Assembly: GCF_002571385.2 (NCBI RefSeq)
Contig: NW_019218293.1
Span: forward strand, 84,033 to 148,032
From: Stylophora pistillata
Lineage: Eukaryota
Direction: 5' to 3'
DNA length: 64,000 bases
Positions 516-12,175 of this stretch are shown in pieces. Made by a program: the position numbers and the translations under genes. The notes beneath the pieces were generated by a model. That model made no database searches. It was not told the DNA's origin and worked only from the letters and a program-made list of their open reading frames with translations. Position 1 is the first letter of the stretch. Each line of letters begins with the position of its first letter.

Positions 516-1603
516 CTTGCTTCATGCCGATACAGAGTGGTTTGTAATGAGGTTACAGTTGTAGTTGTATGTGTGTTACCATAATGGGGCAAGACTTGCT
601 CTCTGATATAATCCTCAATGAATGTCAAGGACCTAAAATAGGACAGAAGAGTAACCAATAATTTTTCACCCATGGTCATTTCATACCAAGTCAGTTTGTA
701 CCCAGCCAGTTGAGTTGATTTGTACTTACTCTAATAATTCAAAAGTATGTTTTCCATAGTAAGTATTTTTATCGTAGGGATAAAACAAATAAATGACCCT
801 TTCACCCCTACTTGTGCAATTCCATAGAAAACCATAGTGAAACCTGACTTGTCAACGCCTGAGAAACTTCGCAGGAATGAATACTGGGATTAGTTTGAAT
901 TGACCACTAGTTTGGGTAGGAACCAACTCAAACCTGGGTATGAAACAACTGAATTTGGACACAAAATGACTGGCTACAAAACGACCGTGGGTATGAAACC
1001 ACTGTATACTACAAGGATTCCCTCCACAAATGCTTAGCAATACACTTCGTTTTATGACAATTTTCCAGAGGAGTATGCCCCATATTCCACCCCCCTTAGA
1101 AAATTGATGCCTGCAGTATCAAGATCGACGGCTCTACGGTCGAAAATCTCACTCTTTGGCTTCAAAACAGCTTGAGAGACCTGGGTTTATGATCCAACAC
1201 GAAATACACGTATACCAAGCTTCCTAATTGTATGGGAAATGCTAATTACTGTCTTGTTCTCGCGCGCATCAAAGCACGATATCATACCTTCCCGATGCTG
1301 TGTAGTCACAATACGTCACTGTAGATAATAATGAAAACAATTCTCGTCTCAGGAACTAGAAGAGCAATCTCGAATTCAAGTTGCGCAAGAAATTTAGGAA
1401 TTAGTACGAACGACTAGCATACCATTTCTTCGCCCATATGGCCCAGAAAACGTCAAGTCTTTTCCAATACAGTTACGTTCAATGTACTTTAGAAGCTTCT
1501 CGTTGTTTCCTTTCTTCTTTCGCTGAGACCTTAGCCGCAAATTTGATAATTCTTCACTCGGAATATCGTAGAATTTCCTTGATCCGTGTTTCTGAGCCGC
1601 CAT
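516..1603 (-). CDS. PLP-dependent aminotransferase class V / cysteine desulfurase-like protein, first three exons (gene continues beyond the window start)
   Basis: GT-AG exons 1603-1423, 1318-1288 and 632-516 splice in frame to ...IGKDLTFSGPYGRRNVTYCDYTASGRSLTFIEDYIREQVLPHYGNTHTTTTVTSLQTTLYRHEAR. The YxDYTASG and YGNTHT motifs are typical of this family. Confidence 0.88.
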
Positions 1604-4306
1604 TTTGAATTAGACTAGAACCCAGGCTTTTTGAGGTAATGAAGTAATTGGAAAAGTTAACCGCTGGACAATCGGTGTAGTATACCACGCTGGTATACCG
1701 CTGAAAAGGAGCCAAAAATGACCCTGGGCTCGAGATTGAGTATCCTGTAGTAATCGAGGATTTTCATTCAGGGCAGATTGGATGAGCGATTGAGGAATCG
1801 ATGAACGAGAGAGGAAACACAATGATCGTGACTCATAATCGATCACTTTTAAAATTCTTTAAACCGCGTCCAAACTTCTCAGCAACCTTCTGTTTCTCAT
1901 CTCTTACCGACTGCACTGAGAGCTGCACCGCTAGCAAAAATTTGTCCCTGATTATCAAATAGCAGTCTTCAAACAAATGAATTTATTTCGTTTTTATTAA
2001 TCAGTTACCTGGAAAAGTGACTGAAATTAACTCCTCATGATGACCACATCCATAACCTTAAAAAGGTCATTAATTATTTTTTCACTTGTAATTTTCAGTT
2101 TCATAGACACGCAATGAATGCAAATTTCTGGGCTTTACGTAATTTTCGTTCGCAAATAAAAGGCAATGATTCCTTGCGTTTGTCTCGAACATCTTTACCA
2201 CCGAAGGCTTTATGATATGAATTGGGAAAACTTTAAGATTAGTGCTAAATATATAAATATAACAACCTTTGTGGTAGTTGTACCGCATTTCTTTTTTTTT
2301 TTTTTTTTTTTCAAGATATTTAGGTGGGCGCCGCGACAAAAACATAAAAGTTCCTGTCAATACAAGCTTGGCGATAAGCAGTATGGACAGACAAATATTC
2401 AACGGGAACTTCAGTACAACCTAACAAATAGATAAATCACCTGTTTCTGTAAATAAATACAAAACAGAGATTAACCTTAGGTTTGATTGCAAAGATCAAG
2501 CGATAAGATCCGCCTACAATATATTTCAAGTGCGAACTATATTTGACTTACAATGTACTGAATGCATAAGCACTGCTCAAGGTTATATCTATTCTTCAAA
2601 AATGAAAACGATCTAAATCCCTCTGTTGCTTTAATCTAAAAAATATTGCCTTTGGCGCCAAGATTAAGTCTCAGTCCTTGTGTTGTCAGTTCAATTTCAG
2701 TTTCAATGAAATTTCTAAAAACATTTCTCTGTTATTTCAGTAACCTCAGTTTATTCTTCCTCGGTTTTATGTTGTCAAAAGTGCCTCCGCCCGCACGGCA
2801 AATATTTACGCTTTAACTTATCGCCGTGTCGAGAGTGATTAAAAAGTTTCTTCCCGAAATACTCACGAGGAGACATAAACAGCCTAAGTTTTGCTTACAA
2901 GATTTCTTTACGTGCATTTTGACATAAAAAAGACCAAGTCGCTATAGCAGTTCGGTATATACATTGAGCGTCAGGCCATTTGAACGAAGAGCTGACAAGA
3001 ATCGATGCGTTATGTGTACAATGACGAACCAATGATTATTGAAAAAAGAACGGAAACACGAAAGCATTAAATCCCTTTTCTTGTGCAGACTTTAATAAAA
3101 CCATATGATACACTATAAGTCCCGAATTCGAGAAAAATTAAGGCCGTTATCAAATCTAAAAAAAAGGTTCCAAACAGAACTTATTTCAAACAGCAGTTAG
3201 GGTAAACGTGTAAAATAAATTATTTGTGATGTTGTAACAAGTCGAGTTTAAACTTTATCGGCTTCAGCGAATAACCTTATATCATTGCGTTAAAATTAAG
3301 TTTAATCAAGCAATTTAGTAGGTTTAGCGGAAAAGAATACGGTAAAAAAAGTGACCAATCATAACAAGTAGGTTTTTTTTAACTTTGTGTAAGTACTTAA
3401 TTATAGACGTACTTCCATTTCATGCTTTGTGTACTTTTTATGTACTTATCTTTCCATTCGCGTTCCCCGAAAATTATTCTTGGTCCCACTGCAAATGAAA
3501 ATATACCACCCAATAGAAATTTTAGACATCCAGAAACAAAAAATATTGCGCCCCGCAAAACAAGAGAAAATTACTGAATTCGCAAAAGAAGACTTGCAAA
3601 AAATTACCAATTAACGCGCTATCAGCCAAAGAACCTATAAATTTCAAAACAGAAAGCCTCGCAAGTTAGATCGGACACGGTTTAATTTCCCATCATCATT
3701 GATTCTCACTACGGCAAAATCAAAGTTGAATTCGAAAAAAGCCTCGGGCTTAATGAAAACTCTTTGAAAGGTTAATCCAGGAAACTTTCACGTCAACAAG
3801 GTAAATTTCCTATTTTATTTACAACTAACCGAGGTCTAGACTAAAATGCTTTGCTTTGAAGTTATTTTTGTACTGTCTTTGTATTTTCAGCAAGGGAATT
3901 ACAAAATCAATCGCTCGAAAGCAGGTAAAGTTTGCGTCCAAAAGTAGCATTTGAGAAGAAACGTTGACACCTTACTGCTCAAACCCTAAATCCAATTATC
4001 GCCAAAAATTTCGTTTCAAGGTAGTTGTAAACATTTTCAGCGCTAGAAATAAATTTTTAATTCGATTCTTGCACGTTTGAAGTCCCAATCGACGCTAATT
4101 GCTTTGGGGAAAAGTGCTAGTTTCTGTGGTTAATTGTCACTAACGAGACTTAAATCCTGAGGTTTCAATCATTTTTTTTTTAAGAAAAGTACGATGCACT
4201 ATGAATTCATGGGCCAACCGTTTCATGGTTTTCAAAAAACAGTAGCGGCAAACGCGTTTAAAACGCGGCTTTAAGCCCCTTTACGAACTGTTTCACGCAC
4301 TCTTAC

Positions 4307-7300
4307 TTTCATCTCTCTATTGTTGGACTTTCTCATTGTAGTTGAGTGCTGTTTCAGTTCCGCGAATAAATGGTCATTAATCTACAGGACAAATTTGCTT
4401 TAAGAGCGTTCATATATGTAAATTTGCCACCTTTACAGCTCGTTGACAGCTGAAAATACCGTTCAGAGTATAAACTCATCGGGTGCATTGACTGTTTAAA
4501 CCAACAAATCTATTTATTAGTTACAGAGGATAAAACACAGTTAGTACCAGGCGGACGAACATACAAATAATGCGGAATTAAATTTTGTTATATACAAAAA
4601 CCTCCCGTAGTGAAATAGCGCAGTCTCTACTGATCTCACTTGCCTTGGAAACTTAGCCTCAATTACGCAAAACAGAGGAAGTGAAATAAAAGAGAGAATT
4701 AACATTCGTCTTCATCGGTATAATTGTTTTAAAAATTCAGAGAAACTCTAACACGAATTTGAATGAGTGGTTCTTACTTCAAAAGTCTCAGGGACGCTTT
4801 TCAGTGATCTTTGAGGATGTAAAAGTTTCCCCGGCGGGAGGGATTGTGTGTTTGTTGTATCAGCTTTTGGCGGTAAAGTCGGGACTTGAATACTGATCTC
4901 TTCTCCAACATTGCCTTCGATATCCCCACTCGTGTTTTTACTGCTATTCCATTGCTCAAGCTCGTTCATAACAGCTAATATTTCTTCTAAGCTGTACAGT
5001 CCCTTTTCTGAATCGCTTCTGGAAAGAACCGGCGTGCGTGTGCCCTTTTCCCCTTGAGAAGACATCGTGCTGGACAGCCTTCTTCGTAATGGAGATTCGT
5101 CTGTGTTCAAAAGCGAGAGAAACTCGCCAAGGTCATATAGTGAAAGGCTCCCGCCGGAATCCTGGCGTGGGTTCAGCTGTGGTCGCGAAGAATTTTCCCT
5201 CCCCTGACTCGAACCAGTTGATTTTAACGCGCCATTAGTTTTGGCAGAATTTGATTCTGATTCACTTTCGCTGGATTTAGACGATGCAGATGACACGCTA
5301 GATAATCGTCTTCTCAAGGGAGATTCGTCTGCGTTTAAAATGCCCAAAAATTCGCGGAGATCATAAATAGAGCTTCTTTTTCGCGATGGATCGGGGGACG
5401 CACCACTAGGTTCGGTACCTGGTACTGGTAGAAAAACATCTTCGTAGAATTCGCTGTCGATGCTTCTGTTCGATTCATCAGTGACGAGTATGCTCACACC
5501 GCTTTGGGAAACGCCGGAAAATTTCCGCCTCGATAAACTTGCAGATGAAAGCTGTTGCTGATGAGTTGGCGACGGGTTTTGTTGAGCGGCATAAAGCGAA
5601 AGGAACTCTCTAAGATCATACACAGACATTTGCCGACTATTCTCGGTTACATCCGTAGCTGACGATGTATTTGTTGATGCTGCTAGGTCATTACCGGTCG
5701 AGTAGCCACTGCTCTCGTTCGTTGTAGTTACGGGGGAGGAAGCGACCGTAGATTTCTCGGATGAATTGGTCGATTGCAGGGGTGAAGATTGACCAGTTTC
5801 TTCGGCTTCACGTTGAAAATGAAACAACATCTCGCGTAAATTATACGTAGATTCGCCTCTTTACTCATTTTCCTGTTGTAACACACTCAGGATTTCTCTC
5901 AGGTCGTACACTGACCCTCTCGGCTGTTGCAAATCTCTTTTCGCACCTTCCTCAGAATTCAAACCAGTTTTGCTTCTAATTGTTGTTTGTTCTTCATCCC
6001 AAGGTGTGACTCGCGCAAGCGGTGGTATATCAGATGTCATAGACAGGAATTCTTCCAGATCGTATACAGACACACTTCGCTTCTCTTTAACCTTGCCAGT
6101 ACCTGAATCGCTCATGTCGCTTTCTGCAGCGCTAGGCCCTTCCTTGTGAAGAGCCGGGCTACTAGGACCTGAATTAGGGCGCGAATTACCCCCGGAACGC
6201 GGCAGAGATAAAAACTCCATGATGTCGTAAGTAGACGTTCTCCTGGCTTCCTCGCTGCGGTTGGCAACGGAGAGCAAGTCATTTGAACTAGAGCTGGCAT
6301 GCGGCGTTAATAAAATTCGCGGCGAAGTCGAACGGCTAGAGTTCTCGCTGGTAGATCCAGAGCCCGTTTCGCTGATATTTCCGAGAGAGAGAAACTCCAT
6401 TAGGTCGTAAACTGAGCCTTTTCTATCGTCTCGCTCTCTCCCAGGAGGCACAAGATGCGATGATGAGTTCGTTTGTGAGTTATTTGCGCTTACTTTGTTC
6501 GTTGTTGTCTTCTTAAGTTGCTCTGCGTTGGACGCTTCGGCCGCCGCCATCAACAGGAACTCCCTTAAGTCATAAACGGACTCACTGAGTTCCCTCTCGT
6601 TCGCATTAGAGGCGGCGCTTGCATTTCGAGACGATAAAGCCGTGGTGGAAGCCTGCCGCTTTAAATCTTCCTTCTGCAGCAAGGTTAATATTTGCTGCAA
6701 GTCGTACAATGAATGCCTCTTTTCCTCGTTTTTCGGTGGGTTTAACATATTGACGTTGCGCTCTGTCAGAGCACCTCCTCTTTGCAATTCTTTCTCACTT
6801 TGAGAGCAGCTCTTTCCTTCAATTTTTAGTCCATCGACATCGGCATCATAAATTAGATTTTGCTTTTTCAAAGAGGGTCTCCGCCTGTCAACAAACTGCT
6901 CTGCGTCCGTTATATCGTTTAATGACTTTCGACCTTTTTGCTTGATCTCAGAGTTAGCAGATTCACTGCAAACCGGTGAACTAGGGGTGCTCTGTGGTGA
7001 ATTTGCAACATCAGTTTTCCAGCGTTGATTACTGTAATTTCTGCGTTTGCCGCCGTGCTCTTTTGTTTTTTCCTCAATCTCAGCGTTATTCAGTACTCGA
7101 GAATTAAGCTTTGATCCGTCGATGTCCTGTACGGCAAGCTGTGGACGGGTTGAAAGGTTCGATCGGACTACTGGCATAAAACCTGCTACGAGGGGAGACA
7201 TAGAACGCTCACTGACATTTCCATCGGCGAGAAGTCGCAAATTTTTCTTCCTATTTGATAACTCAGGAGAAGATTTTGCCAGCCTGCGCGACCTTGTTAA

Positions 7301-7843
7301 CTTCTTTGTAGGTTGAAAGATGCTGCTTCCCCGGCGGGGCAAGAGCGAATCTTTATGTAAAGGGAGAAATTCGTCATTGCTAGTTTGTGAACCTAAGCGT
7401 TGGCGACTTGCTTTCCCTCTTACGTGAGAAACATTTTCGCTGTCAAAAAAACTTGTTTCGTCTTCACTGGTTTCCTTGACAGCTGCCTCCATAATTAATT
7501 TCATTTCATCCTCGGTCTTGTTGTTATTTTTCTTAAGTTTTTTCGAGCGTCCCTGCAACCTTAAACTCTCCACTTTGTTTGCCATATTCATTGGTGATGT
7601 TGACATCGCAACTTCGGCGTTTTCGGTTGATGCTGCAGTTTGGGTTTCGTTTCGAAACCTTTGCGCGCCGGTTGATGTGGAGCGAAGCGAATCCAACTGC
7701 ACGATAGGAGGAAGTCGCACAAGGCCATGTTTATCGCGAACGATCCCCAAATTTCTCTTGGAGTCTTCGCCGTCGATTTCAACGGAGCTTTCTTGGGTTA
7801 TTGGCGGAAGCTTCAGGTACGAATCTCCAAACGCGAAAGCCAT
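4307..7843 (-). CDS. Large Ser-rich, disordered protein with 11 [RK]xxSxYDLxEFL repeats; interrupted by an in-frame TAA at 5861-5863; 3' end unresolved
   Basis: First ATG is at 7843 (MAFAFGDSYLKLPPI...). ORFs 5861..7861 and 4748..5830 share a frame and are joined by open codons RGESTYNLRE. There is a donor GAA|GTAAGA at 4778/4777 and a probable next exon 4381-4307 (INDHLFAELKQHSTTMRKSNNREMK|GTAAGA). Confidence 0.75.
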
Positions 7844-10800
7844 AAAGACACCTCCAAACAACGATAATTTGAACCGCGAGAATAGCGTTGAAGTTTGTAA
7901 ACAGTTTTAAACTGGCGAAAAAGCGACACCTCGTTACCGCTACACTGTGTTTCTGTCGAGTATCGACTTGGAATGATATCTAAACAGCAAACATCGCTTG
8001 AAATTGCCCATCCATGAGCGCTTCAGCTCGTTATTGATTTATTTTTAGACTGGAAACAGAGCAACTGGCGGAAGGGGCATTGAAAATGACGTCGACGGCA
8101 ATAACTGAGACTTTTAGCGCATAAATTAGCCGGGGAGCCTATTTTTGATCTCAATGTTTTTTTCCAGTCGATGGCAGCCGGATGTGAGTTTAATCCACCA
8201 ATAGGCTGCGAGTCACTGATTCAAAGCGCTTAAATAAATGTGGTTCACTTGGACATTGAGATCACTTTTACGTCAAAGAAATACTTAAAGTTCAGCCTTG
8301 ACAGATCTGGCTAGATAGATTTGTTTTCAACAATTTACTGTAACCCTAACAGGTTTTTTTTTTTAACGTAAACTCTGACTTCGCAAGTTTCATCTAATCG
8401 AGAAAATATCTTTAATTGTTTCATTTCGACGGTAAACTCTGGCACCCCCTAAATGAGCCACATTTTAATTAGACCTTCCGTGCGCAGAGCTGATGTCATA
8501 AATGTTAGTCTTGCAGTCTTCGCTCGGTAAATAAAATTCAAACAGCAGGTGTTATCGGCACTAAGCGGACGATCGCGTTTCGCAAAATTCGCACAAGGCT
8601 CAATTGCCTGAGTAACTTACGATCGAACTGTATTCCAGTCGAATTCAAACAACATTAGCCTTATAGAGTTACGTTTGGTTACTGTCTACAAAGTACTTGA
8701 CTGTGTTCGGATCGATCAAATTTTCGTTTAGGCTTTCCTGACTAAACCTCTAAAATCTCAATTTTAAGGAAAACAAGTAAAAATATCGGCCTGGATTTAT
8801 GATTGACATGAAAAATTATGCTCAAATGAGAAGTTTTTTTTAATTGCTAGTCTCTGAAATTTCATATTCCTTGTTTTGGCGAATTAACACAAAGATCTTG
8901 AAGAGTTTTACGTTATGATCTTCTCTTTCATTTTACTGAAATCCCATATTTCGTACTGCTAGCCTACTGTTTGTTTTTTAACATAAATGGCTCTATTACG
9001 AAGCGCAATCCTCGCTAAAAGCAAATTAGTGATTCTCTCTCGAGGAAATTGCGACTTCGCAGGTTGCTGAAAAATTTGCATAAATTTACGTGGGCGAGAA
9101 CGAGACCCCAATTTTATGGAATAAACAGAAGAAGGAAAACACTCGATATCGTTTAGGCTAGTGACATTTCTTTTAACTACGTCATTGGCTCCCAAATTGA
9201 ATTGATAAATTTGTCTTTAAGCGAGTGGGAACAACTTTGCACCGATTACGGCCACAATGGAGAGGAGAAAAATTTCTGATGGCCGAAAAAATCGGCCTCT
9301 CTCAAAGACTGAGAGTCGTTCAGATATCGTCCAAGTTACAGTGTGTAAACAGTGTTGATGTGCAGCAAAAAAATATTAACATATTCATTTTTCCGAATGT
9401 AATGTTTCCTTTGTAAACACCTATTTCCCTTCGGGCTTCAAGAAAGATAATCAAATATTCCAAACATTAAATGGCTTTGGTAGGTTAATTGGAGAAAATT
9501 TTCAGGAACTGCAATTTGATAGAGTACAAGGTTCTGGCTCTATCCAGATGTTTGTTTCCTATCCCCACAGTTAGTCAATTACCTTTTTCCTTTTAAGCTT
9601 AGAGGCTAACCTTCATGATCTTGTTTCCTACAATTTATTGAAAAACACCAACTGGTCATCCATAAGTAATTGGATGTCCATCTCATAGTTTTTCTGATTC
9701 TGTATTCATGCTTTGCATGACTCCTTAGATATAAACAGAACAGAAACGATACTGAGGCACTTCTGAGCGATCAAAATCATCCTAAACATGATCATATAAT
9801 GACTGATCGGATAACGATCATACAAAACTCTGTTTTTAATACATCATTCAGTGGAACCTTATGGATTAAAACTTCTCGATTTCAGACTTTTTCAGTCACA
9901 GAACAGATAACTCAAGGAGTCAAAAATTCGATCGGCAAATCTCAAAGCAACATGTACAGCTGCTGCTTTTCTAACCGCTCTGGAAATCAAAGGCTGGGTT
10001 TTGTGCACAGTGATTGATGGTCACAGCTTCCAATATTCCCGGACAAAATGAACAGGAATGAAAACAAAAACACGCCACAATTTAGAAGTCCAAATCGTGG
10101 GCGAGTTGCACGCATGATTTTTTCTGCAGGGAAGCTCTACACGTACGACTGTCATCTTATCGACATTTACTAGCCTGCACGCCGCCTGTGATGTCTGCGT
10201 ATGCCCGCGAAAAATATAGAAGAAGCACTTGAGGAGCTTTATGTAAACATCAGCCTCTGTTGGGCGCGCAAATATTGCCCGGTTGATCATGATCGCGGAC
10301 ATTATTAGATCTTATGAGATCCGAAAGGCGAAAAGTTTTCTGCTGAGCAAAGAAAAAAAAAAAAAAAAAAGGAGGAGAACCGTTGGCTTTCATGTTTAAA
10401 TAATGTTCCTTTAACAAAGATTAGAATATATTTTCATGCCAAATTAGGGCCTCGCATGGCCATCCCTTCATTAACAAATTTTCTCCGCGCGCTGGGCAAA
10501 ATTTCGTGGAACAGTTCACCCGCAAAAATAATCAACTCTTTTAAGTGTTGACCGTTAAGCACTAGTGTAATTTTACGATCAAAATATTTTTCACTTCTTC
10601 AGCGATAACGTCAAAACGCTCTCCTTCTTAAATCAACTGTTTATGGAAGGCTTTCATCACACTGGAGTCAGGGAAAATGCTTCAGTTTATTCGGTCACAA
10701 GTCAATCATACGTGAACTTTAAGGCCAGTTCTTGAGTGCTATGGGTGTTGTCATCCAATTTTTTCAGAAATTGAGAAGGGTTTTTGTCCCTAACGTTTCT

Positions 10801-11534: not shown

Positions 11535-12175
11535 CTCTGATTGGCTAATTTTAATCACACGCGGGAAAAAGAACTTGAATTGTCTTACGGCGCCAAACTT
11601 GAATCACTTACCTCACATCGCCACAAGGTCAAGTTAGTTTGGAAATTTGCAGTAGATATTTTTCTTTTTGGTTACCCTTTTTAAGAGAATTTTTCTTTGC
11701 ACTATGGCCGACAACTCAAAGCAAGAGAAGAAAACCAAGAAACCTTCTTCTTACGTCCTTAAACGAAGTAAGGTTTTTGTTTTTCTCTAACGAACTGCGC
11801 AAGTATTGACCGCCATCTTGTTCATGTACATTTCACTTTCACTTCCAGATGGAAAAGAGGAGGAGATCAATCTAAATAAAGTCACTGCTAGGATCAAAAA
11901 GCTTGGTTATGAGCTCTCTGAGTTTGTTGACACGGTAAGATTACTTTTACGTGTAAATCGGTGAACGATAGGATCGACTAATCGAACTGAACAATAACTT
12001 ATCTTTTGGCGCCAAATGGCAAAACGAAATCTACAATTTATCTTTGGGATTGATTGCAAATGCCTGTTTCTGTTCCATAATATTTAACTTTTGGACAAAT
12101 GAATCTCGTGGAATCCTTGAGAGTACCATTTTCTTTGTCGTCTTCAGGTCAAATTGAAAAATCTTGGCGCGCAAT
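11535..12175 (+). promoter_or_regulatory. RRM1 promoter/5' region with an inverted CCAAT box and E2F-like sites
   Basis: ATTGG at ~11540; GCGGGAAA at 11561; GGCGCCAAA at 11589. The last two are each followed by TTGAA. Intronic TTTTGGCGCCAAA at ~12004 and TTGGCGCG at ~12164. Confidence 0.55.

What the first reader, a model, noticed from the sequence alone, without database searches (positions are those of the whole stretch)
4965..6730. Unrecognised multivalent scaffold: 11 dispersed copies of a basophilic phospho-site fused to an amphipathic helix, [RK]xxSxYDLxE[FI]L
Seen in sequence: KRHSLYDLQQILTLL, LSESVYDLREFLLM, RKGSVYDLMEFLSL, RRTSTYDIMEFLSL, RSVSVYDLEEFLSM, PRGSVYDLREILSVL, RGESTYNLREMLFHF, RQMSVYDLREFLSLY, KRSSIYDLREFLGIL, SLSLYDLGEFLSLL and EKGLYSLEEILAVM. 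They are separated by unrelated Ser-rich spacers of about 20-80 aa. Conserved motifs with diverged spacers imply selection on a short linear motif rather than a recent DNA tandem repeat. Established knowledge: R/K-R/K-x-S is a PKA/CaMK-type site; the L-x-x-F/I-L-x-x-L spacing resembles paxillin LD or LxxLL helices; YDLREFLL and YSLEEIL resemble eIF4E-binding YxxxxL-phi motifs (eIF4G YDREFLL, 4E-T YTKEELL), but with F/I at position +5. Inference: a phosphorylation-switched sponge or scaffold that binds many copies of one partner. I recognise no named family for it.
Basis: partly seen in the sequence, partly recalled or inferred. Interest (0 to 1): 0.78.

Follow-up and report, generated by a model that had tools for sequence, protein, structure and literature searches.

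The report
Anthozoan disordered protein, eleven helix motifs
A transcribed, intron-less coral gene encodes a floppy protein of about 1,030 residues with eleven conserved copies of a short helix-forming motif, most of them preceded by a kinase-type serine. The family occurs only in corals, sea anemones and probably soft corals, has no name and no known partner, and looks like a multi-site docking scaffold.

Summary
One minus-strand reading frame (window 7843 to 4748) carries 11 copies of [RK][RK]xS-Φ-YDLxE[F/I]L; composition shuffles give 0.03. Reads from four runs, including the likely source sample and two polyA-RNA runs, show AAA (Lys) there, so the gene is intact.

It is a single coding exon, covered by polyA-RNA contigs, and under purifying selection (dN/dS 0.06-0.15 in motifs, 0.19-0.24 elsewhere). 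About 60 hexacoral orthologues keep 8-11 copies at the same positions. A shorter form (500-600 aa, 5-7 copies) comes most probably from octocorals. A profile search of 1.84 billion proteins found only these. There is no Pfam match, no solved-structure relative and no paper.

AlphaFold2 gives disorder, with short helices that start at the D-L of the motifs. Y-D-x-x-E-F reads as a helix capping box plus hydrophobic staple.

The canonical eIF4E, LxxLL, LD and GBA (Gα-binding) patterns each fail at a defining position. The best reading is a new multivalent array of pre-formed amphipathic helices beside basophilic serine sites. The partner and the phosphorylation are untested.

The parts
4748..7843 (-). 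Complete coding sequence, one exon, 1031 codons plus the stop codon (4748-4750). The ATG is at 7841-7843 (protein starts MAFAFGDSYLKLPPI).
   Evidence: orthologues start and end at the same places; colinear polyA-RNA contigs over 4201-7670 and 4495-7034 with no joints; dN/dS 0.15-0.24 over the whole gene.
5861..5863 (-). In-frame TAA in the window sequence. This is an assembly error; the real codon is AAA (Lys661).
   Evidence: + strand 5863 reads A>T in all four runs laid, DNA and RNA. Codon effect. Orthologues have K or R here.
6734..7843 (-). N-terminal ~370 residues: disordered, with a few conserved short motifs (two [KR]LPPI, KLTRSRRLAKSSPELS, GRKSLNDIT, LKIEGKSC).
   Evidence: Alignments; AlphaFold2 pLDDT below 50 throughout.
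6677..6724 (-). Motif copy 1 (KRHSLYDLQQILTLL), class I (Ile at +7, longer helix).
   Evidence: helix in the model.
6545..6592 (-). Motif copy 2 (SESVYDLREFLLM). No basic residues upstream in stony corals; NRSSS in anemones.
6380..6427 (-). Motif copy 3 (RKGSVYDLMEFLSL).
   Evidence: R, S, Y, E, F and L are invariant in 28 orthologues.
6200..6247 (-). Motif copy 4 (RRTSTYDIMEFLSL).
6035..6082 (-). Motif copy 5 (RSVSVYDLEEFLSM).
5879..5926 (-). Motif copy 6 (PRGSVYDLREILSVL), class I. It starts a 40-residue predicted helix that runs into copy 7.
   Evidence: helix H655-694 at pLDDT 70-83 in the orthologue model.
5816..5863 (-). Motif copy 7 ((K)RGESTYNLREMLFHF), class I, 21 residues after copy 6. 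Its first codon is the false stop.
5591..5638 (-). Motif copy 8 (RQMSVYDLREFLSLY).
5336..5383 (-). Motif copy 9 (KRSSIYDLREFLGIL), followed by the conserved SPLRRRLSS.
5108..5155 (-). Motif copy 10 (SLSLYDLGEFLSLL), preceded by the invariant DSxGxxS and followed by a second SPLRRRLSS.
4967..5014 (-). Motif copy 11 (EKGLYSLEEILAVM), class I. Gly replaces the Ser in stony corals; Ser is present in anemones.
3300..4747 (-). Probable long 3' untranslated region (at least partly).
   Evidence: PolyA-RNA contigs cover 3300-4238 in both RNA runs. The next gene's first recognised exon lies only at 1412-1606. The strand of the RNA is not shown by contigs.

Best explanation
Shown: window 7843-4748 (minus strand) is one intact, intron-less gene covered by polyA-RNA contigs, for a ~1031-aa Ser-rich (16.5%), near-neutral protein. 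It has no signal peptide or membrane segment and is predicted to be almost wholly disordered. The family is confined to Anthozoa. Its main conserved content is 11 positionally conserved copies of a 14-residue motif, [RK][RK]-x-S-Φ-Y-D-L-x-E-[F/I]-L-[S/T]-Φ. Inferred from the sequence pattern and the AlphaFold2 models: Y-D-x-x-E-F is a helix N-terminus of the hydrophobic-staple (Y at N', F at N4) plus capping-box (D at N-cap, E at N3) type. Each copy would then be a pre-nucleated amphipathic helix of 2-3 turns that shows L+4, F/I+7, L+8 and Φ+10/11 on one face. Three residues before the cap sits a Ser in a basophilic (PKA, CaMK or Aurora type) context. Inferred mechanism: a multivalent docking array. 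Each helix would fit a hydrophobic groove of a folded partner, so one molecule could gather up to about ten partner molecules (avidity, clustering or condensate scaffolding). Phosphorylation of the Ser next to the helix N-terminus would tune or switch binding. Two conserved sub-classes exist, F-type and I-type with a longer helix, so there may be two partners or two affinities. The partner is not identified.
For: Gene reality: the false stop is refuted by reads. Colinear polyA-RNA contigs come from two studies, and one of them has no coverage upstream of 7634. dN/dS is 0.06-0.15 in motifs and 0.19-0.24 elsewhere. Microsynteny with RRM1 is conserved. Motif: 11 copies against 0.03 expected. There are 425 instances in 42 hexacoral orthologues: S 92% at position 0, R/K 70% at -3, Y 100%, D 82%, L 99%, E 89%, F 70% / I 26%, L 100%. 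Thirty-five of 49 invariant columns lie in the motifs. F or I is fixed for each copy across species. Disorder plus helices: mean pLDDT is 40.5 and 43.3, and the only secondary structure is helices starting at D/L of 9 of 11 motifs in the long form and of 5 of the 6 copies in the short-form model, whose only other helix is a 3-residue turn at 35-37. No folded domain: no Pfam hit, no solved-structure relative. Restricted family: 33 hits in 1.84 billion representatives, all of this family. The long and short forms are linked by hhalign at 99.2%. The staple and capping-box reading and the kinase consensus come from established knowledge, not from a test here.
Against: No binding or phosphorylation data exist. 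The strict basophilic context is present in only 4 of 11 copies here and in 49% of hexacoral instances, and the Ser is missing in copy 11, so the kinase site is less constrained than the helix. Ser is never replaced by Thr, Asp or Glu, which fits a phospho-acceptor but also fits a purely structural role. Most motif helices are predicted at only moderate confidence (pLDDT 50-70), apart from copies 6 and 7. No known motif class fits, so no partner can be named. The helices could instead mediate self-association.
Confidence: 0.6

Rival explanations
1. The copies are Gα-binding-and-activating (GBA)-like motifs. They would dock in the switch II/α3 groove of Gαi-GDP, making the protein a multivalent non-receptor G-protein regulator, perhaps under PKA feedback. 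This would be a third convergent origin of GBA, after vertebrate CCDC88 and nematode GBAS-1.
For: The GBA core is Ψ-T-Ψ-x-[D/E]-F-Ψ with an invariant F (PMC4760084). GIV has VTLQQFL and DAPLE has VTLEEFL (PMC5454376). This protein has YDLEEFL (copy 5) and YDLQQIL (copy 1), so Ψ, L, x, E/Q, F and L line up. Known GBA motifs lie in disordered regions, arose convergently and are tuned by nearby phosphorylation (PMC10943482). The coral Gαi keeps every contact residue cited: W211, F215, K248, L249, S252, N256, W258 and F259.
Against: The defining Thr is never present (D 82%, N 9%, S 7%, T 0%). In the GIV peptide array, replacing T1681 or F1685 by essentially any residue abolishes Gαi3 binding, and E1687 and E1688 after F-L also matter (Supplementary Note 2 of PMC5454376). 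Here those two positions are S/T and L, and 4 of 11 copies have I or M instead of F. A 5-of-6 pattern match found after trying many motif classes is weak evidence.
Confidence: 0.05
2. eIF4E or 4EHP sponge: each YDLxEFL helix binds the dorsal surface of a cap-binding protein like the Y-x4-L-Φ motif of eIF4G, 4E-BP and 4E-T.
For: Residue-level likeness of YDLREFL to eIF4G's YDREFLL (own knowledge). The motif is helical.
Against: The register differs by one inserted residue. The defining Leu at Y+5 is absent in 0 of 518 instances, although the search pattern allowed it. No test of binding was possible, because the coral eIF4E gene is split over several exons.
Confidence: 0.04
3. The functional unit is only the phospho-serine. 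The protein would be a multi-site client of 14-3-3 (or another phospho-reader), and the helix would merely position or mask the site.
For: R-x-x-S with a hydrophobic +1 is present in about 70% of instances. 14-3-3 proteins commonly read such sites (own knowledge). Intron-less 14-3-3 genes exist in this genome.
Against: The mode-1 Pro at +2 is never present; the position is an invariant Tyr. The helix residues are more conserved than the basic residues, which a pure phospho-site model does not explain.
Confidence: 0.15
4. Nuclear co-regulator. The acidic Φ-x-x-Φ-Φ helices would act as activation-domain or receptor-box-like motifs, binding KIX or TAZ domains of CBP, Mediator or nuclear-receptor grooves. 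The architecture would resemble NRIP1/RIP140 and the switch would resemble CREB's pKID.
For: L-x-x-[F/I]-L is a Φ-x-x-Φ-Φ pattern in all instances. The helix is acidic and amphipathic and lies next to an RRxS site, as in pKID. The protein is ~1000 aa, single-exon and disordered with about 10 dispersed motifs, like RIP140 (own knowledge). It has several basic clusters.
Against: LxxLL proper is met in 0 of 518 instances. The profile search found no homology to any co-regulator. Localisation is unknown. The KIX domain is split over exons, so no test was possible.
Confidence: 0.1
5. Atg8/LC3-interacting (LIR) array: E-F-L-S-L would serve as [DE]-[WFY]-x-x-[LIV] cores regulated by an upstream phospho-serine.
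For: 7 of 11 copies here and 69% of hexacoral instances fit the formal core.
Against: Four conserved copies have I or M instead of the obligatory aromatic. The invariant Y-D-L upstream is not explained. The segment is predicted to be helical, whereas LIRs bind as extended strands (own knowledge).
Confidence: 0.04
6. The locus is a pseudogene, or two separate ORFs, because of the in-frame stop.
For: The window sequence has TAA at 5861-5863.
Against: All four read sets give AAA. dN/dS is well below 1 on both sides of the site. Orthologues are uninterrupted.
Confidence: 0.01

Closest known systems
GBA (Gα-binding-and-activating) motif of GIV/Girdin, DAPLE, NUCB1/2 and GBAS-1
   Same: A short helix-forming motif in a disordered region. 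The pattern Ψ-(cap)-L-x-E/Q-F-L is shared, and LEEFL is identical to DAPLE. It arose convergently in unrelated proteins and is tuned by neighbouring phosphorylation (PMC4760084, PMC5454376, PMC10943482).
   Different: Known proteins have one copy each; this protein has 11. The invariant Thr is Asp here, the acidic pair after F-L is missing, and F is I or M in four copies. Published peptide-array data say that changes at each of these positions weaken or abolish binding to human Gαi3.
NRIP1/RIP140, a nuclear-receptor co-repressor (own knowledge, not tested)
   Same: About 1,100 aa, one coding exon, disordered, with 9-10 dispersed copies of a two-turn L-x-x-Φ-L helix. This is the nearest architectural analogue.
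   Different: There is no sequence homology. The motif here is LxxFL or LxxIL with a fixed Y-D cap and an upstream Ser, never LxxLL. RIP140 is a vertebrate protein.
CREB pKID (RRPSY...IL..L) binding the KIX domain (own knowledge)
   Same: An RRxS kinase site directly at the N-terminus of an amphipathic helix, so that phosphorylation controls the docking of the helix.
   Different: pKID is a single copy with a different register of hydrophobic residues. Nothing here shows binding to KIX.
Paxillin LD motifs and eIF4E-binding Y-x4-L-Φ motifs
   Same: Short acidic amphipathic helices used as docking sites. Paxillin carries five of them.
   Different: The defining residues are not met: LDxLLxxL in 0 instances and Y-x4-L-Φ in 0 of 518.
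NCBI automatic name 'serine-rich adhesin for platelets-like' (Montipora orthologue)
   Same: Only the serine-rich composition.
   Different: This protein has no signal peptide, wall anchor or SRR domain. It is an intracellular-type disordered animal protein, so the name is a compositional artefact.

Membership tests
eIF4E-binding motif (Y-x-x-x-x-L-Φ) | Leu at Y+5 followed by a hydrophobic residue | tested here: not met
   0/11 in the window, 0/425 in hexacoral and 0/93 in short-form instances. Y+5 is F, I or M.
Nuclear-receptor box | L-x-x-L-L | tested here: not met
   0/518; the fourth position is never Leu.
Paxillin LD motif | L-D-x-L-L-x-x-L | tested here: not met
   0 matches in any instance. 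The hydrophobic register is offset by one.
GBA motif | Thr at position 2 of Ψ-T-Ψ-x-[D/E]-F-Ψ | tested here: not met
   D 82%, N 9%, S 7%, T 0%. Replacing T1681 in GIV abolishes binding.
GBA motif | Invariant Phe at position 6 | tested here: inconclusive
   F in 7/11 copies here, 70% of hexacoral and 100% of short-form instances. I or M in four conserved copies.
GBA motif | The target groove (SwII/α3 residues W211, F215, K248, L249, S252, N256, W258, F259) is present in the organism's Gαi | tested here: met
   The exons of the coral Gαi on contig C16 read RSERKKWIHCFEGV and ESMKLFDSICNNKWF. This is a necessary condition only.
GBA motif | Binds GDP-bound Gαi and speeds nucleotide exchange | not testable with these tools
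   This needs biochemistry.
Basophilic kinase site (PKA type R-R-x-S-Φ) | Basic residues at -3 and -2, Ser at 0, hydrophobic residue at +1 | tested here: inconclusive
   The strict pattern holds in 4/11 copies here and in 207/425 instances. A basic residue at -2 or -3 is present in 8/11. Ser is 92% and +1 is V, L, T or I in 91%. Actual phosphorylation is not testable here.
14-3-3 mode-1 site | R-S-x-pS-x-P | tested here: not met
   Position +2 is an invariant Tyr, never Pro. Looser 14-3-3 patterns are not excluded.
LIR / Atg8-interacting motif | Aromatic-x-x-[LIV] core in an extended conformation | tested here: inconclusive
   The formal core is present in 7/11 copies. Four conserved copies lack the aromatic residue, and the segment is predicted to be helical.
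Helix capping box plus hydrophobic staple | S/T/D/N at the N-cap with E/Q/D at N3, and hydrophobic residues at N' and N4 | tested here: met
   The pattern is present in 11/11, 424/425 and 93/93 instances. AlphaFold2 helices begin at the D/L of 9/11 motifs in the long form and at 5 of the 6 copies in the short-form model.
Any Pfam family or solved structure | Significant profile match | tested here: not met
   The best Pfam E-values are 0.058-0.087, below the family cut-offs. The best solved-structure match has E = 2.2 and is a low-complexity match.

The most novel reading that the evidence does not exclude
The motif is a previously undescribed class of short linear motif: a self-capped amphipathic helix gated by an adjacent basophilic phospho-serine. 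Anthozoans would have evolved a dedicated disordered protein that uses 5-11 copies of it to gather many molecules of one conserved hub protein into a kinase-controlled cluster or condensate. The most striking candidate hub is Gαi-GDP, through a divergent GBA-like mode. That candidate alone has a probability of about 0.05.
Probability: 0.35. Interest if true: 0.72.

Novelty: new variant of a known kind. Interest (0 to 1): 0.55.

Why it matters
Multivalent arrays of short motifs organise signalling complexes and condensates, but few have ten or more copies of one motif. This family offers a clean natural case: one exon and no folded domain. Each copy has stayed in the same place across the whole depth of the stony coral to anemone split. 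The motif has a clear structural logic, a built-in helix cap next to a kinase site. The family is restricted to Anthozoa, so it may mark lineage-specific wiring of a universal hub such as a kinase pathway, a G protein or a co-activator. It is experimentally tractable in Nematostella, which has an orthologue (LOC116604645). Finding the partner would define a new motif class and could annotate about 80 currently nameless or misnamed proteins.

Tried and rejected
(1) Complex prediction of two copies of an intron-less coral 14-3-3 (L017:1474-2217:-) with residues 466-556 (copies 3-4) scored 0.22, under the mark of 0.34. The tool gave no verdict, so this counts neither for nor against binding.

(2) eIF4E, KIX and FAT domains could not be offered as partners.

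(3) The ESM Atlas look-alikes scored 0.80 or less and were generic disordered proteins. They were not informative.

(4) Searches of solved structures with the family profile and with a 30-aa motif peptide found nothing.

(5) Full-text searches for motif strings and for orthologue locus tags gave only chance 5-mer hits, such as NFAT5 and a desaturase.

(6) Naming the organism of the short family from its neighbour gene failed, because none of the 14 listed hits (E <= 1e-20) carried an organism name. Sample accessions gave a partial answer. One member comes from a Tara Pacific metagenome of unknown host.

(7) Synteny between the short-family and long-family loci was not found.

(8) Rejected on pattern grounds: clathrin box, eh1, SIM, GoLoco, PAM2, calmodulin-binding helix (the helix is acidic) and a β-TrCP degron before copy 10 (the DSG is not kept in anemones).

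(9) A secreted or skeletal-matrix role was rejected. There is no signal peptide (maximum Kyte-Doolittle value over 19 residues is 0.69), and the family is present in non-calcifying anemones.
Full report
**What is at the locus.** On the minus strand one reading frame runs from an ATG at 7843 to a stop at 4748-4750. It is 1031 codons long and is interrupted only by a TAA at 5861-5863. I searched the two pieces separately (window:5864-7843:- and window:4751-5860:-).

**The stop is not real.** I laid contigs of four public runs on 3300-9200: two DNA runs, one of them the probable source sample, and two polyA-RNA runs from different studies. All four read T instead of A at + strand 5863. That turns TAA into AAA, Lys, which is the residue class orthologues have there. 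In 5.9 kb the window differs from the source-sample contig at six sites, all transversions. The assembly is therefore locally error-prone.

**Transcription and gene structure.** PolyA-RNA contigs are colinear with the genome over 4201-7670 and 4495-7034, with no joints. In one RNA run coverage stops upstream of 7634. This fits a real single-exon message with a long 3' UTR better than DNA carry-over. Six of the runs that hold the stretch are recorded as RNA, from four studies. Orthologous genes are also uninterrupted ORFs. The gene sits head-to-head with RRM1, whose first exon lies near 11692 on the + strand. The first exon of the same downstream neighbour as in Oculina lies at 1412-1606. Microsynteny is thus conserved among stony corals.

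**The observation.** The pattern occurs 11 times, against 0.03 expected from shuffles. Tandem Repeats Finder finds nothing. Genome-wide, the back-translated pattern is at control level outside this gene, and the genome has no paralogue.

**Conservation.**
- The word-based search found 61 relatives, all hexacorals. They include Oculina, Desmophyllum, Pocillopora, Montipora and Porites, and the anemones Actinia and Nematostella. They are about 900-1100 aa long, have no Pfam domain and are named 'uncharacterized', apart from one compositional misnomer.
- Almost all full-length ones keep 8-11 copies at corresponding positions, and the choice of F or I at +7 is fixed for each copy.
- Over 425 instances the positions not forced by my search pattern are also conserved. 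Ser at 0 is 92% and is never Thr, Asp or Glu. R/K at -3 is 70% and at -2 is 55%. V, L, T or I at +1 make up 91%.
- In a 28-sequence alignment, 35 of 49 invariant columns fall in the 15% of columns that make up the motifs.
- Against the two closest orthologues, dN/dS is 0.06-0.15 in motif codons and 0.19-0.24 elsewhere.
- Nine non-synonymous variants seen in the RNA runs, and a tenth at codon 870 in all four runs, lie outside the conserved motif core. The closest, L419P, is three residues upstream of the Ser of copy 2.

**Wider relatives.** A profile of the alignment, scored against 1.84 billion representative proteins, gave only 33 hits. These were the long family, fragments of it, and a second group of 500-600-aa proteins.
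- The second group carries 5-7 copies of RKxS-x-YDLREFLSLP and an N-terminal KVRLPP motif like that of the long form.
- Profile-profile comparison links the two groups at 99.2% probability.
- One short-form protein comes from metagenome BioSample SAMN12856808.
- The source papers list SAMN12856788-811 as 12 black-coral, 8 Callogorgia and 4 Paramuricea metagenomes, and give 800-807 as Callogorgia (PMC7068898, PMC11535214).
- By elimination, 808 is most probably the octocoral Paramuricea. This is an inference. The short form is not found in the window's genome.
- The family is therefore anthozoan. Nothing was found in medusozoans or bilaterians, with the usual caveat for fast-evolving disordered proteins.

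**Structure.** AlphaFold2 with the family alignments gives mean pLDDT 40.5 for the long form and 43.3 for the short form. No folded domain appears. In the long form the only secondary structure is short helices beginning at the D or L of 9 of 11 motifs. In the short-form model, helices sit at 5 of the 6 copies, plus one 3-residue turn at residues 35-37. Copies 6 and 7 lie 21 residues apart and merge into one 40-residue helix at pLDDT 70-83. The protein has no hydrophobic segment and is 16.5% Ser. From established knowledge of helix termini, Y-D-x-x-E-F fits a hydrophobic staple (N' and N4) with a capping box (N-cap and N3). The pattern holds in every copy here and in all but one of 518 instances. 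This explains why Y, D, E and F are as conserved as the hydrophobic face.

**Comparison with known motifs.**
- The canonical eIF4E, nuclear-receptor-box, LD, eh1 and 14-3-3 mode-1 patterns fail at a defining residue in essentially all instances. In particular, +7 is never Leu.
- The closest match I found is the GBA motif, Ψ-T-Ψ-x-[D/E]-F-Ψ. DAPLE has VTLEEFL and GIV has VTLQQFL, against YDLEEFL and YDLQQIL here.
- The coral Gαi keeps all the groove residues.
- However, the published peptide array shows that the Thr and the Phe tolerate essentially no replacement and that the acidic pair after F-L matters. Here the Thr is Asp, four copies lack Phe, and the acidic pair is absent. I therefore do not file the motif as GBA, and I give that mechanism about 5%.

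**Verdict.** This is a real, expressed and selectively maintained anthozoan gene for a disordered protein. Its function almost certainly lies in an array of self-capped amphipathic helices, most of them next to a basophilic Ser site. A multivalent, probably phosphorylation-tuned docking scaffold is the best-supported mechanism (about 0.6). The partner, the kinase and the cellular role are unknown.

Noticed in passing
window 3811, 4260, 4609, 5235, 5863, 7914: The window differs from the contig of the probable source sample at six sites in 5.9 kb, all transversions (A>T x3, T>G x2, G>C x1). One creates the false stop. Another (5235) gives Asn870 where the reads give Thr or Ile and the closest orthologue has Thr. 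This suggests local consensus errors in the assembly.
   Followed up: partly
window ~11692-17329 (+) and beyond: RRM1 (ribonucleotide reductase large subunit) lies head-to-head with the gene, about 3.85 kb from its ATG. The same arrangement is seen in two other stony-coral loci (L006, L007).
   Followed up: partly
window 1412-1606 (-): This is the first recognisable exon of the downstream neighbour. It matches the start of the Oculina gene with Aminotran_5 and ATP_bind_3 domains at 69% identity over 65 aa.
   Followed up: no
proteins P0076, P0077, P0078, P0080: These database 'proteins' look like this gene with S>F/L, T>I/M, P>L/F, A>V and R>C/W throughout. That is a translation of C-to-T converted DNA, most likely assemblies of bisulfite-sequencing runs, and not real variants.
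   Followed up: no
window 5156-5182 (-), before copy 10: There is an invariant R-x-D-S-x-G-x-x-S just upstream of copy 10. In stony corals it reads DSGGSLS, which is formally a β-TrCP-type DSGxxxS degron, but anemones have DSSG or DSEG.
   Followed up: partly
window about 5290-5335 and 5060-5107 (-): Copies 9 and 10 are each followed by the same conserved L-N-x-D-E-S-P-L-R-R-R-L-S-S, a second basophilic site. This points to an old internal duplication of a longer unit.
   Followed up: no
P0023-P0025: In one coral lineage the 16-mer of copy 5 (SRSLSVYDLAEFLSMT) occurs twice, 53 residues apart, and copies 6 and 7 are not detected. Units are still gained and lost while the total stays near ten.
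   Followed up: no
G000:C49:451036-455662: Two intron-less 14-3-3 genes lie in tandem about 4 kb apart, each with the whole domain in one open frame. The other 14-3-3 loci are split by introns.
   Followed up: no
L002 5301-7232, L004 4643-6367: The short-form genes lie about 3 kb downstream of a conserved Filamin-repeat gene. Some relatives of that gene also carry RING and B-box domains (TRIM-like). This differs from the long form's neighbourhood.
   Followed up: partly
window 7760-7843 and 7690-7730 (-), N-terminus: There are two copies of a [KR]-L-P-P-I motif (SYLKLPPI and GLVRLPPIV). The second is nearly invariant and is shared with the short family (GKVRLPPL). Its function is unknown.
   Followed up: no
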